A DNA stretch of 63,493 nucleotides, filler included, from Octopus bimaculoides (lineage: Eukaryota): NCBI RefSeq assembly GCF_001194135.2. It is 8 parts of 7 records of this genome, joined end to end, with 100 filler letters (N's around TTAATTAATTAA, not from the genome) between each part and the next. Parts side by side here need not be neighbours in the genome. Positions count along the whole stretch, not along the records: positions 17,474 to 24,746 come from NC_069008.1; 7 more parts are not named here. One strand, 5' to 3'. Positions 19,299 through 22,706 of this stretch are shown here, one piece after another (position 1 is the first letter of the stretch; every line of letters starts with the position of its first letter). The notes beneath the pieces were generated by a model. The model had not been told where the DNA came from. It did no database searches and saw nothing but the letters and a program-made list of their open reading frames with translations. The position numbers and the translations under genes were made by a program.

Positions 19299-19304
19299 TT
19301 TATT
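19299..19304 (-). promoter_or_regulatory. Candidate polyadenylation signal (AATAAA on minus strand) for the minus-strand gene
   Basis: Plus-strand TTTATT, ~260 nt downstream of the stop at 19566-19568. Confidence 0.35.
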
Positions 19305-19565
19305 TCAAAAGTTAATCTTAAACATTACTGGAGCAAGGCCAGTAAGGGAATCTTCTGTGCAATAGGTAGATATGATAGAATTAGTAGCCAAATCTTCCTC
19401 AATTGACACTTTCCTGCTTCAGAGAATAGCATGCTGGACAATGTGGTTTTCGGTTGACTCGTAGCTTAACACCTTGATAGACATTTAAGTGAACTGAGAC
19501 ACTAAATGCCATTAAGAACCTTTATCACTTCATCTAAGAGCTGTTCTGCAACATCTTTCGGTTAA

Positions 19566-19612
19566 CTATATCCCCTCATCCGGCAAAGTGTCTTCTATAT
19601 CTAATTTGACAT
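19566..19612 (-). CDS. Probable terminal coding exon of the orphan minus-strand gene: (D)VKLDIEDTLPDEGI*
   Basis: Polypyrimidine acceptor TTTTTGTATCTTTGGCAG|AT, phase 1 matching the upstream exon, in-frame TAG. Confidence 0.5.
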
Positions 19613-19940
19613 CTGCCAAAGATACAAAAACAAGAAATGATTGCAGTAACATAAACAAAAATATAAAAGATGTGTACTGTAGGCTGTTATAAATACGACA
19701 ATGACTAAATTAACAGAGGAATAAAAATTAGTTAAAAAAAAAAACATGAAAAACAGTAAAATCATAAACTTTAATAGAATTACTTCAGAGATAACATTTC
19801 AATGAGGAATTAGGAGCTGAACCTGATCTCCATCATTCTGTCCAACCCATGCCAGCATGGACAATGGATGCTAAATGGTGATGAAAAGTTGAGCTGAAGA
19901 AAAGAGTTAGAGAAATAAATTAATAGCATTTCGTACTCAC

Positions 19941-20117
19941 CAATTCCTCGCCAATGACCATCTAACTCCTGTGCCAATGGAAGAAGATCTATTGTCTGAT
20001 TATTTTCAGCCGGAGGGTTCTGAGCCGGAGGATTCTGAGCCGGAGGGGTTTGAGCCGGAGGATTCTGAGCCGGAGGGTTCTGAGCCGGAGATTTCTGAGC
20101 CGGAGGATTTTGTGTCT
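19941..20117 (-). CDS. 177-nt phase 1-1 exon: (Q)TQNPPAQKSPAQNPPAQNPPAQTPPAQNPPAQNPPAENNQTIDLLPLAQELDGHWRGI
   Basis: Acceptor AAATATTTATTTCAG, donor G|GTGAGTAC, length divisible by 3, open frame; flanks homologous to the 69-nt exons. Confidence 0.75.
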
Positions 20118-20837
20118 CTGAAATAAATATTTCCAAGTTTTAACTTTATAGTAAAATTTCTTTATAACTAATCTATATTTTATTATTGCGAGACATTCAT
20201 CTCATCAATGGTCAATGGGTGACCACAACGGTGTTGGTCAACAGTTTTATACTTTCTACAGTGGTTACCAAGAAGTAGATCTGTGTTTCGGTCCACAATA
20301 AAATACATTAACCTCTCTCTATTAAGCCTTCCTACATAAAACTAATAATTTTGCAATTATCTCATTTAATTAACACTTGTTTCTCTCTTAGTTTTGTCTT
20401 TCCTTCCTTATGTCTTTGCCAAATCTATGACCTGATGTCGTTCCCCCACCTCCAGTCATCACTAATCAACATTCTTTTCATTTTCAGCTTAATTCACTTA
20501 ATTACGAATATAAAAAGGACAATCATCCTTGTTATACACCTCGTTGTCCTCCTCCTTTTCTTTGTCATCCCCCTAACTTCGTCATCAACCTCCTCTTCAC
20601 TATCTTCCTCCTCTTCGTCCCCCTCCTATTGCCTTCCTTCTCCCCCCCCCCGCCGTCTTCATCATTTAAACAACCACACTTCAATGTTTGCCCAAGACTA
20701 ACAATATTTGCTGAGGCAGATTTTCCATGCTTGGGTACCCTATATGTCACCCATTTCCCAGCAAGTCAGTTGTCTACTACACTTAGATGAAAGCAAAATT
20801 TACAGAAATCAATTAGAAAATACAATTTCATACTCAC

Positions 20838-20906
20838 GAATCCGGTTAGGTCTTGCTGGTAAACCCTGCATTATCCTCCCAATATTTTCCCTAATGTTTT
20901 GAATTT
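20838..20906 (-). CDS. 69-nt phase 1-1 exon: (Q)IQNIRENIGRIMQGLPARPNRI
   Basis: Acceptor ATATTTAATTTCAG, donor C|GTGAGTATG, open frame. Confidence 0.8.
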
Positions 20907-21461
20907 CTGAAATTAAATATTTTCAAAATCTTTAAATCTATAGTAAAATTTCTTTGTCAATAATCAATAGTTTAATTATTACGAGACATTCGCCTCATCA
21001 TGGTCAACTGGTAACCACTATTATTTCAGCCAACAATTTTATACTTTCTAAAATGGTTATCATATAAAAACTCCATATTTAGGTCCACAATAAAATGCAC
21101 AAATCTCCCTAAATATATTCTTTCTTTTGAGCCATCCTCCATAATCTAACAATGCTGCAATTATTTCATTTAATTAACACTTGATTGTCTCTGAGTTTTG
21201 TCTTTCTTTTCTTATATCTTTGGCAAATCCATGACATCAAAATGTTCTATCACTTCCAGACTTCACTAATCAACATTCTTCTCACCTTCTGCTCAATTCA
21301 CGTAATTATGAATATAAAGAGGGCAGTCATCCAAGTTGTACACCTTCTCCCCCTCATACTCCTCCAACATTGTTTACCTTTTCCACGCCATCACACCGCT
21401 CCTTCTCATGAGTGTCTGAAAATTAATAGAAATCAATTAGAAAATACAATTTCATACTCAC

Positions 21462-21530
21462 GAATTCGATTTGCTCTTCCTTGTGGATTCTCTGACATCC
21501 TCTCAGCCTCTTCCCCACTGGTTTCAATTT
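21462..21530 (-). CDS. 69-nt phase 1-1 exon: (Q)IETSGEEAERMSENPQGRANRI
   Basis: Acceptor ATATTTATTTCAG, donor C|GTGAGTATG, open frame. Confidence 0.8.
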
Positions 21531-21628
21531 CTGAAATAAATATTTTCAGAATTTTGAAATTTTTATTTTAAATTTCTTTATTAATCTATAGGATAATCTG
21601 CTGGTTTAATCACCTGTCATACTTTAGT

Positions 21629-22375
21629 TTAAGAGGTGGGTTGAGTGAGAGGTGGAGTGAGTGAGTGAGAGGTGGAGTGAAGGTGGAGAGAGTGAGAGGT
21701 GAGTGAGTGATGAGGTGGAGAGAGTGAGAGGTCAAGAGAGTGAGATGTAGGGTGAGTGAGAGGTGGGTTGAGTGAGAAGTGGAGTGAGTGAGTGAGAGGT
21801 GGAGTGAAGGTGGAGAGAGTGAGAGGTGAGTGAGTGAGATGTAGGGTGAGTGAGAGGTGGANNNNNNNNNNNNNNNNNNNNNNNNNNNNNNNNNNNNNNN
21901 NNNNNNNNNNNNNNNNNNNNNNNNNNNNNNNNNNNNNNNNNNNNNNNNNNNNNNNNNNNNNNNNNNNNNNNNNNNNNNNNNNNNNNNNNNNNNNNNNNNN
22001 NNNNNNNNNNNNNNNNNNNNNNNNNNNNNNNNNNNNNNNNNNNNNNNNNNNNNNNNNNNNNNNNNNNNNNNNNNNNNNNNNNNNNNNNNNNNNNNNNNNN
22101 NNNNNNNNNNNNNNNNNNNNNNNNNNAAGAGAGTGAGATGTAGGGTGAGTGAGAGGTGGGTTGAGTGAGAAGTGGAGTGAGTGAGTGAGAGGTGGAGTGA
22201 AGGTGGAGAGAGTGAGAGGTGAGTGAGTGAGATGTAGGGTGAGTGAGAGGTGGAGTGAGTGAGAGGTGGAGTGAGTGAGAAGTAGAGTGAGTGAGATGTA
22301 AAGTGAGGTGGAGGTGAAGTGAGTGAGAGGTGGAGGTGGAGTGAGAAGTAGATGTGCAGTGAGTGAGAGGTGGAT
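21629..22375. repeat. G-rich degenerate (GAGT/GAGGTG) minisatellite in an intron, interrupted by a gap
   Basis: Direct reading; ~125 nt appear identical on both sides of the gap. Confidence 0.85.
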
Positions 22376-22386
22376 GTGACAAAGTC

Positions 22387-22422
22387 TTTTACATTTTGAG
22401 CCTATACTCTTTGACAGAAAGG
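22387..22422 (-). ncRNA. Decayed minimal type I hammerhead-like motif (same family as 29884-29919)
   Basis: Minus strand CCTTT CTGTCAA A GAGT ATAG GCTC AAAATGT A AAAG; CpG-type decay of CTGTCGA and CGAAACGT. Confidence 0.35.
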
Positions 22423-22637
22423 AATAACGGTGAAAAAAATGGAGAAAGAATGAAAAAACAGAGAGAAAAATTGTTTTGGGGTTCAACAGTTGAACATGGT
22501 GAGATAGGAATACTTTGGAGCTAAGCATTCAACGGGAAACTAAGAATTGAATCTGTTCCCAGTGATTTTGTCAAACAACAGCTCAGGTGAATGCAAAATT
22601 TATAGAAATCAATTAGATAATACAATTTTATACTCAC

Positions 22638-22706
22638 GAATTCGGTACTCTCTTTCTTGTAAATTTTCTGACATCTTTTCAACATTTTCTTCAATATTCT
22701 GAATTT
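22638..22706 (-). CDS. 69-nt phase 1-1 exon: (E/Q)IQNIEENVEKMSENLQEREYRI
   Basis: Acceptor TTGTCAATTTCAG, donor C|GTGAGTATA, open frame. Confidence 0.8.

What the first reader, a model, noticed from the sequence alone, without database searches (positions are those of the whole stretch)
19299..22706. Hidden spliced orphan gene built by tandem exon-intron duplication
Seen: four homologous units on the minus strand share the acceptor ATTTCAG and donor ATT(C/G)|GTGAGTA. Three exons are exactly 69 nt and one is 177 nt. All are phase 1-1 and join into one open frame (IQNIEENVEKMSENLQEREYRI-Q-IETSGEEAERMSENPQGRANRI-Q-IQNIRENIGRIMQGLPARPNRI-Q-TQNPPA...ELDGHWRGI), then a probable terminal exon (DVKLDIEDTLPDEGI*) and AATAAA. 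Introns 20118-20837 and 20907-21461 are also alignable. Splice sites and exon length are conserved while the peptides diverge strongly. The ORF track misses this gene. I recognise no known domain. Inference: a lineage-specific, rapidly evolving modular protein whose symmetric exons could be skipped combinatorially.
Basis: partly seen in the sequence, partly recalled or inferred. Interest (0 to 1): 0.75.

Follow-up and report, generated by a model that had tools for sequence, protein, structure and literature searches.

The report
Expressed orphan gene from duplicated exons
The predicted hidden gene is real: RNA reads show it spliced exactly as proposed into a small polyadenylated message with three tandemly duplicated 69-base exons, but no relatives were found, it is not shown to make protein, and genes of this kind are common in animal genomes.

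Summary
On the minus strand, exons of 69, 69, 69 and 177 nt and a terminal exon have the stated splice sites. All four predicted junctions are read in seven RNA runs, and a poly(A) tail follows the AATAAA. The 21862-22126 gap lies inside intron A-B in a satellite, so it does not touch the frame; RNA joins exon A to exon B directly.

New findings:
- There are two more 5' exons. One is 51 nt and sits in the 22745-23402 gap.
- The best ORF is 132 aa, from the second AUG in exon A. An out-of-frame AUG lies 11 nt upstream.
- No exon skipping is seen.
- Exons are single-copy in DNA, but much of the shared intron sequence is a dispersed repeat that ends at the acceptor.
- Exon bodies are 65-71% identical, while the first 43 intron bases are 93-95% identical.
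- The PPAQN tract varies in length, always in frame.
- No homologue or domain was found.

Verdict: a real, lineage-restricted gene built by tandem exon-intron duplication. It is probably coding for a disordered protein, but this is unproven. It is a new member of a known kind, of modest interest.

The parts
23819..23895 (-). Exon 1 (5'UTR). The donor is CCAAG|gt at 23819/23818. The transcript start is diffuse, about 23876-23895.
   Evidence: RNA depth rises from 0 at 23904 to full depth by 23850, and 5 molecules begin at 23876. An X6 contig joins 23819 to exon 2 sequence. A TATAAG-like motif lies about 35-55 nt upstream (inference).
22745..23402 (-). Assembly gap that hides exon 2. Exon 2 is 51 nt, TAAACTTCATTTTACTCCGGAAATTTCTCTGAAAGATATCTTTGCTGAGAG, rebuilt from read overhangs. 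It is 5'UTR and contains the in-frame TGA.
   Evidence: 130 raw reads in 3 runs continue from 22708 into the same 30 letters with agreement 1.0. The overhang from 23819 overlaps it by 11 nt. The sequence is absent from the window.
22638..22706 (-). Exon A (69 nt, unit 1). It holds the first AUG (22685-22683, 50-aa frame) and the second AUG (22674-22672, start of the 132-aa ORF).
   Evidence: Junction reads on both sides.
21531..22637 (-). Intron A-B. It contains the conserved donor-proximal element 22595-22637, the satellite 21632-22379 and the gap 21862-22126.
   Evidence: Junction 22638/21530 is read in 7 runs. Satellite. An X29 DNA contig joins 21831 to 22131.
21462..21530 (-). Exon B (69 nt, unit 2).
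   Evidence: It is 71% identical to A and 65% to C, with no indels.
20907..21461 (-). Intron B-C. It contains the conserved element 21419-21461. About 21013-21300 belongs to a dispersed repeat family.
   Evidence: Alignment to intron C-D. DNA depth reaches up to about 2900 against about 45 at 80% likeness.
20838..20906 (-). Exon C (69 nt, unit 3). The 50-aa alternative frame stops here (TAA 20873-20871).
20118..20837 (-). Intron C-D. It contains the conserved element 20795-20837. A dispersed-repeat copy spans about 20118-20445, and its end abuts the acceptor.
   Evidence: Foreign DNA contigs stop matching at 20114-20117, and one runs on unaligned for 469 nt (pieces 2-4). Depth is 1600-4300 against about 45.
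19941..20117 (-). Exon D (177 nt). It holds seven 15-nt repeats (PPAQN-type, 20008-20106) that vary in length, then unique sequence.
   Evidence: A 15-nt insertion allele appears in DNA contigs. Forms 75 nt shorter and 90 nt longer appear in RNA reads.
19613..19940 (-). Intron D-E. Its donor-proximal part is homologous to the other units. It carries a very high-copy repeat at 19795-19913.
   Evidence: Alignment. DNA depth about 3e5.
19281..19612 (-). Exon E (terminal). It has 15 codons, then TAG at 19568-19566, a 3'UTR, AATAAA at 19304-19299 and the poly(A) site at about 19281.
   Evidence: An X1 contig ends at 19281 followed by a 19-nt T run on the + strand.

Best explanation
Window positions about 23895 to 19281 on the minus strand hold a single-copy, seven-exon, polyadenylated gene with an mRNA of about 0.85 kb.

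Its core arose by tandem duplication of a 0.6-1.2 kb exon-plus-intron unit. That gave three constitutively spliced 69-nt phase 1-1 exons. A fourth unit keeps only its intron flanks. The body of its exon (exon D) is now dominated by a 15-nt in-frame microsatellite encoding PPAQN-type repeats, which is still length-polymorphic. The acceptor of exon D sits at the very end of a dispersed-repeat copy, and the other acceptor regions are homologous to it. The 3' splice signal was therefore probably donated by a mobile element and copied along with the unit.

Selection now appears to act mainly on splicing and on frame. The acceptor, the exon ends and the first 43 intron bases are nearly identical between units, and exon length is fixed at 69 nt. 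The exon interiors have diverged as fast as the introns or faster.

The most likely product is a 132-aa protein of 14.8 kDa and pI 4.7. It is rich in Pro, Gln, Asn and Glu, has no cysteine, and has no signal peptide or membrane segment. It would be translated by leaky scanning from the second AUG of exon A and would terminate in the last exon, so the message escapes nonsense-mediated decay. It would be an intracellular, intrinsically disordered repeat protein.

Status of each step:
- Shown: the transcript, its splicing, its copy number and the polymorphism.
- Inferred: translation, the transposon origin of the acceptor, and any cellular role.
For: Transcript:
- All junctions are read in 7 RNA runs, with a poly(A) tail and PAS.
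- The 5' exons and the transcript start are mapped.

Tandem origin:
- The units are colinear; exons are 65-71% identical and introns 77%.
- Exons and introns are at single-copy DNA depth at 95% likeness, and the exons stay single-copy at 80%.

Repeat-derived acceptor:
- Foreign repeat copies end at 20114-20117.

Splicing constraint:
- The donor-proximal 43 nt are 40-41/43 identical, against 45-49/69 for the exons (Fisher p 0.007-0.0002) and against the rest of the intron (p 0.002).

Coding:
- The frame is stop-free for 142 of 144 codons across five exons, reached by 0 of 5000 shuffles.
- Random substitution at the observed level keeps the frame open only 26-35% of the time per copy.
- Exon lengths are 69/69/69/177 nt with no indels, while the introns are full of them.
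- The repeat unit is 15 nt, and all observed length variants (+15, -75, +90 nt) are in frame.
- The stop codon is in the last exon.
- dN/dS is 0.23 (A-B) and 0.39 (A-C) in this frame, and about 1 or interrupted by stops in the other frames.

Protein properties.
Against: - The 132-aa ORF starts at the second AUG. An AUG 11 nt upstream has the same A at -3 and opens a different frame.
- dN/dS for B-C is 1.4, and substitutions show no clear third-position excess. The exon bodies could simply be neutral.
- There is no homologue in 5.8 billion clusters, or by exhaustive phmmer with exon D. All 68 phmmer hits fall on the low-complexity tract. There is no Pfam domain.
- No translation data are available.
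- The end of the repeat at the acceptor is shown directly only for exon D.
Confidence: 0.6

Rival explanations
1. It is a spliced, polyadenylated long non-coding RNA. The open frame is a by-product of duplicating a stop-free, purine-rich 69-nt exon and a 15-nt microsatellite. Selection acts only on splicing signals or on the act of transcription.
For: - Exon interiors (65-71% identical) diverge at least as fast as the introns (77%), while the splice-proximal intron is 93-95% conserved.
- There is no third-position bias overall, and B-C dN/dS is 1.4.
- The first AUG is out of frame.
- No homologues or domains were found.
Against: - None of 5000 shuffles reach the observed open frame.
- Each diverged copy had only a 26-35% chance of staying open.
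- Exon lengths are exact multiples of three and free of indels, while the introns are not.
- The ORF ends in the last exon.
- A-B dN/dS is 0.23.
Confidence: 0.28
2. The translated product is the 50-aa basic peptide (pI 10.2; MLKRCQKIYKK...GKILGG) from the first AUG at 22685-22683, which stops in exon C. The long frame is untranslated or only a minor product.
For: - It is the first AUG after a 5'UTR of about 150 nt, with A at -3.
- The only upstream AUG (23879-23877) sits at the diffuse transcript start.
- This frame is also open through exons A and B.
Against: - Its stop at 20873-20871 lies upstream of two exon junctions. That would normally trigger nonsense-mediated decay, yet the mRNA is abundant.
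- A-B dN/dS in this frame is about 1.
- The equivalent AUG is absent from units B and C.
Confidence: 0.1
3. The repeated units are fragments of a dispersed transposon, or an assembly artefact, rather than a gene-specific tandem duplication.
For: - Parts of introns B-C and C-D belong to a repeat family of roughly 25-100 copies.
- Two assembly gaps and a satellite lie in the locus.
Against: - The exons and the donor-proximal elements are at single-copy depth (about 40-55) in DNA of several individuals, even at 80% likeness.
- Three distinct exon sequences are read joined in order within single RNA reads.
Confidence: 0.02

Closest known systems
Constitutively included tandem exon duplications in animal genes (Kondrashov & Koonin and Letunic et al., as reviewed in PMC8373072)
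   Same: Adjacent homologous exons have equal length and symmetric phase, arose by local duplication of exon plus intron, and are all retained in the mature mRNA. [quoted passage not shown]
   Different: Here the duplications make up most of the coding potential of a gene with no detectable relatives. They are not an added module in an old, conserved protein. The exon bodies are much less conserved than their intron flanks.
Mutually exclusive or cassette exon clusters from tandem duplication (Drosophila Dscam1 type)
   Same: Both are tandem arrays of homologous exons with conserved intronic elements next to each copy.
   Different: All three exons are spliced in series, and no alternative junctions are seen. 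The intron ends show no significant complementarity (z -1.4 to -1.7).
Exonization through transposon-supplied splice sites (for example Alu-derived acceptors in primates; from established knowledge)
   Same: The polypyrimidine tract and AG of the acceptor lie in the terminal bases of a dispersed-repeat copy.
   Different: The exon body lies outside the repeat and is single-copy. The repeat-plus-exon unit was then amplified in tandem.
Orphan (taxonomically restricted) and de novo genes (for example PMC3590893, PMC4888513)
   Same: It is short, has few domains, is predicted to be disordered, has no homologues, is associated with repeats, and its coding status is uncertain.
   Different: It has a fully resolved seven-exon structure with strong expression. 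Its origin (de novo or diverged beyond recognition) could not be tested because no sister genome was available.
Pro-Ala-Gln pentapeptide low-complexity repeat proteins (for example hit P0025, which has an identical (PPAQN)6)
   Same: The pentapeptide tract is identical or similar.
   Different: The flanking sequences are unrelated and the matches are confined to the repeat. This is compositional convergence, not homology.

Membership tests
Tandem exon duplication, constitutive type | Neighbouring exons are homologous, with the same length and phase | tested here: met
   A/B/C are each 69 nt and phase 1-1. They are 65-71% identical without indels, and their flanks are 93-95% identical.
Tandem exon duplication, constitutive type | All copies are present together in the mature transcript | tested here: met
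   Serial junctions A-B, B-C and C-D are read in 7 RNA runs.
Mutually exclusive or combinatorially skipped exon cluster | Transcripts exist that omit one or more of the homologous exons | tested here: not met
   No A-C, B-D or A-D junction with 3 or more reads in 3 raw-read runs, and none in 4 contig runs. Rare or tissue-specific skipping is not excluded.
Orphan / taxonomically restricted gene | No detectable homologue outside a narrow lineage | tested here: inconclusive
   No hit for the 132-aa protein. An exhaustive phmmer search with exon D gave only low-complexity hits, and Pfam gave none. Genomes of close relatives were not available, so the width of the lineage and any syntenic precursor are unknown.
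Protein-coding gene | An open frame under codon-level constraint, or direct evidence of translation | tested here: inconclusive
   The frame is open far beyond chance, and exon lengths and the VNTR preserve it. dN/dS is 0.23, 0.39 and 1.4 on about 13 synonymous sites. The ORF starts at the second AUG. No translation data.
Transposon-derived splice site (exonization) | The splice signal lies inside a copy of a dispersed repeat | tested here: met
   For exon D, independent foreign copies (depth 1600-4300 against about 45) stop matching at 20114-20117, which is the AG and the first exon bases. For exons B and C this rests only on homology of the acceptor region.
Extensin-like proline-rich proteins (Pfam PF02095) | Score at or above the curated Pfam threshold | tested here: not met
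   24 bits against a cut-off of 105, on the PPAQN tract only.
   The exons are at single-copy DNA depth at both 95% and 80% likeness.

The most novel reading that the evidence does not exclude
This is a gene caught early in its birth. A mobile-element end supplied an acceptor next to previously non-genic DNA. The resulting 69-nt symmetric exon was amplified in tandem. Its copies now diversify under positive selection (exon bodies changing faster than introns, B-C dN/dS above 1), while a 43-nt intronic element and the exon length are held fixed. A still-mutating in-frame microsatellite extends the protein.
Probability: 0.2. Interest if true: 0.55.

Novelty: new member of a known kind. Interest (0 to 1): 0.35.

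Why it matters
The result shows that reading raw sequence for repeated splice-site and exon-length patterns can recover a genuinely expressed gene that ORF-based tracks miss.

The locus is also a compact worked example of how a new multi-exon gene can be assembled: a repeat-supplied acceptor, tandem amplification of an exon-intron unit, and in-frame microsatellite growth.

If translation and positive selection were confirmed, it would be a useful model for the early evolution of orphan proteins. On present evidence it is one of many lineage-restricted transcripts of unknown function.

Tried and rejected
- Exon 2 in the window: 0 matches with up to 3 mismatches. It lies in the 22745-23402 gap, and I could rebuild it only from 30-letter read overhangs.
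For the same reason I did not attempt structure prediction.
- Exhaustive phmmer with the contiguous exon D peptide: 68 hits, all on the PPAQN tract and unrelated elsewhere.
- Pfam: only sub-threshold low-complexity hits.
- Literature search for PPAQNPPAQ: 0 papers.
- tRNA and Rfam scans of the piece: no tRNA. The only Rfam hits were microRNA-family matches at 27-46 bits, against gathering scores of 75-100, on TA/CA microsatellite. I rejected these as chance.
- Pairing between intron ends (a Dscam-like docking idea, or intron looping): duplex energies are not different from shuffles (z +0.5 to -1.7). Rejected.
- Homology of the exon D body to the 69-nt exons: not significant (z <= 2).
- A-to-I editing: no excess of T>C (+ strand) changes in the exons.
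- Joint 22615->20117, seen in a few RNA reads: it is neither a lariat nor a back-splice and could not be resolved.
- Tissue specificity could not be read, because run metadata are coded.
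Full report
**1. Observation.**
- The exons are 22706-22638, 21530-21462 and 20906-20838 (69 nt each) and 20117-19941 (177 nt).
- Each is preceded by (a/t)tttcag and followed by GTGAGTA(T/C).
AATAAA is at 19304-19299.
- The frame is stop-free for 142 of 144 codons. None of 5000 shuffles reached that.
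- The piece has two N runs, 21862-22126 and 22745-23402.

**2. The gap test.** The 21862-22126 gap lies inside intron A-B, within a satellite of 16/32/94-nt periods that spans 21632-22379.
- It cannot affect the reading frame, which depends only on the exons.
- RNA reads join 22638 directly to 21530 in all seven runs examined. In the three raw-read runs this junction has 25-40 reads each. Exons A and B are therefore on one transcript, in this order and on this strand.
- One DNA contig (X29) even joins 21831 to 22131. That fits a gap that is only more satellite. Because the contig itself is repeat sequence at about 3x depth, it is not proof of adjacency.

**3. The gene is real.**
- All four predicted junctions are found with GT..AG ends on the minus strand, in four contig-based RNA runs and three raw-read runs.
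- In the raw-read runs the junction read counts are 31-58 (19941/19612), 13-54 (20838/20117), 41-86 (21462/20906) and 25-40 (22638/21530).
- Exon depth exceeds intron depth by roughly 5-10 fold.
- A contig ends at 19281 followed by a T run on the + strand. This is a poly(A) tail 18 nt after the AATAAA.
- Downstream, 17970-18700 is silent, and everything else that shows depth there is high-copy repeat. No other gene is seen in the piece.

**4.
- Reads covering exon A continue upstream into a sequence that is absent from the window: GAAATTTCTCTGAAAGATATCTTTGCTGAG followed by AG. This is seen in 130 reads across three runs with agreement 1.0.
- A contig joins an exon that ends at 23819 (CCAAG|gt) to TAAACTTCATTTTACTCCGGAAATTTCTCT, which overlaps the first sequence by 11 nt.
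- So there is an exon 1, with a diffuse start at about 23876-23895, and a 51-nt exon 2 hidden in the 22745-23402 gap. Contig lengths fit this arithmetic.
- The gap holds no further expressed 69-nt unit, because exon 1, exon 2 and exon A are joined directly.
- The mRNA is about 850 nt.

**5. Reading frames.**
- The longest ORF therefore starts at ATG 22674-22672 (MSENLQ...) and encodes 132 aa.
- It is the second AUG of the 5' region. An AUG 11 nt upstream (22685-22683), also with A at -3, opens a 50-aa basic frame that stops in exon C at 20873-20871.
- The only earlier AUG (23879-23877) sits at the transcript start itself.
- Termination in exon C would leave two downstream junctions, which would normally trigger nonsense-mediated decay (established knowledge). 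The 132-aa ORF instead stops in the last exon.

**6. Anatomy of the duplication.**
- Exons A, B and C are 65-71% identical with no indels.
- Introns B-C and C-D align colinearly at 77% identity (415 of 538 columns), with many indels.
- The first 43 intron bases are 40-41/43 identical in all three pairs. This is significantly more than the exons (p 0.007-0.0002) and more than the rest of the intron (p 0.002).
- The exon body is, if anything, less conserved than the intron (p 0.04-0.08).
- Start-to-start spacing of the units is 1176, 624 and 789 nt.
- The fourth unit is recognisable only by its flanks. The body of exon D shows no significant similarity to the 69-nt exons. It consists of seven 15-nt repeats plus unique sequence.

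**7. Copy number and repeats.**
- At 95% likeness, DNA contigs of three individuals cover the exons and introns at single-copy depth: about 40-60, 10-15 and 45-70. Only 19795-19913 (about 3e5) and 22175-22531 are high-copy.
- At 80% likeness the exons remain single-copy. Intron segments 20101-20271, 20329-20442, 21127-21183 and 21241-21297 rise to 1100-4300, which is roughly 25-100 copies.
- Part of the intron similarity therefore reflects a dispersed repeat family.
- Foreign copies stop matching at 20114-20117. One of them runs on for 469 unaligned bases. That position is the acceptor AG and the first base of exon D.
- I infer that the 3' splice signal was supplied by the end of a mobile element and was copied with the unit. 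For the acceptors of exons B and C this rests on homology only.

**8. Polymorphism.**
- DNA contigs of two individuals carry one extra 15-nt repeat at 20091.
- RNA reads show forms 75 nt shorter and 90 nt longer.
- All variants keep the frame. With a 15-nt unit that is automatic.

**9. Coding evidence.**

For:
- The long open frame.
- Only a 26-35% chance per copy that random substitution at the observed level keeps the frame open.
- Exon lengths that are multiples of three and free of indels.
- A stop codon in the last exon.
- dN/dS of 0.23 (A-B) and 0.39 (A-C) in this frame, against about 1 or stops in the other frames.

Against:
- dN/dS of 1.4 for B-C, on only about 13 synonymous sites.
- No clear third-position excess.
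- The out-of-frame first AUG.
- No homologue: 6 word-sharing candidates, none scoring.
- 68 phmmer hits with exon D, all restricted to the PPAQN tract and unrelated elsewhere.
- A Pfam Extensin hit at 24 bits against a cut-off of 105.

I put protein-coding at about 0.6-0.65.

**10. The putative protein.**
- It is 132 aa, 14.8 kDa, with pI 4.7 and GRAVY -1.14.
- Pro, Gln, Glu and Asn together make up 45% of the residues, and there is no Cys.
- The maximum 19-residue hydropathy is 0.09, so there is no signal peptide or membrane segment.
- The layout is two and a half 23-residue modules (the start codon lies inside the first), then the PPAQN tract, then an acidic 36-residue tail.
- Unit A has hydrophobic residues at heptad-like spacing (my reading of the sequence, untested).
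- The most likely product is an intracellular, intrinsically disordered repeat protein. Its cellular role cannot be derived from the present data.

**11. Exon skipping.**
- No junction that skips A, B or C reaches three reads in any run. The combinatorial-skipping idea is unsupported in these samples.
- Pairing between intron ends, as in docking-site systems, is not significant.

**12. Comparison and novelty.** Each ingredient is known: constitutive tandem exon duplication, transposon-supplied splice sites, coding microsatellites and orphan genes. Their combination in one small, well-expressed gene is a neat example but not a new kind of system. It is a new member of a known kind, with interest about 0.35. 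The organism is coded in the run tables and I did not identify it. The width of the lineage restriction is untested, because no sister genome was available.

**13. Unresolved.** A joint 22615->20117 appears in 15 RNA reads in total (1, 8 and 6 in the three raw-read runs) and is absent from DNA contigs. It is neither a lariat nor a back-splice. It may come from an exon-less unit hidden in the upstream gap, or from a polymorphic repeat insertion.

Noticed in passing
window 22615 and 20117: A few RNA reads (X21 8, X22 6, X20 1) join the last bases of intron C-D plus the first base of exon D to position 22615, which is 23 nt into intron A-B. The shorter side is never longer than 24 nt, and the joint is absent from DNA contigs. 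It is neither a lariat nor a back-splice. It may come from an exon-less unit in the 22745-23402 gap or from a polymorphic repeat insertion.
   Followed up: partly
window 19795-19913 and 18962-19209: Copies of a very high-copy dispersed repeat. DNA word depth is about 3e5 against about 45 for single-copy sequence, and RNA depth is also enormous. One copy sits in intron D-E and another just downstream of the gene. A 66-nt x 2.7 tandem repeat at 18812-18989 adjoins the second copy.
   Followed up: partly
window 21632-22379: A (CTCACTCACC)-like satellite with periods of 16, 32 and 94 nt fills the middle of intron A-B and brackets the assembly gap. A DNA contig of one individual joins 21831 to 22131.
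   Followed up: partly
window 20008-20106: The 15-nt coding repeat (PPAQN) varies in length between individuals. A +15 nt form appears in DNA contigs, and -75 and +90 nt forms appear in RNA reads. Paired variants at 20076/20077 and 20091/20092 occur in 20-50% of reads.
   Followed up: yes
window 22595-22637, 21419-21461, 20795-20837: A 43-nt element immediately after each 69-nt exon's donor is 93-95% identical between units. That is far above both the exons and the rest of the introns. Its function (splicing enhancer or gene conversion tract) is unknown, and it shows no significant pairing with the acceptor region.
   Followed up: partly
window 17474-17969: TA and CA microsatellites lie next to another high-copy repeat. 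Rfam microRNA-family matches here (27-46 bits, against gathering scores of 75-100) are low-complexity artefacts.
   Followed up: yes
window 18190-18272: A 34-nt tandem repeat (2.4 copies, 93% matches) lies in a stretch that is transcriptionally silent in the four RNA runs examined.
   Followed up: no
window 22651-22744: DNA contigs of three individuals give depth 0 over exon A and its acceptor at 95% likeness, although RNA contigs and raw reads cover it. This is probably short unitigs next to the assembly gap, but I did not check it.
   Followed up: no
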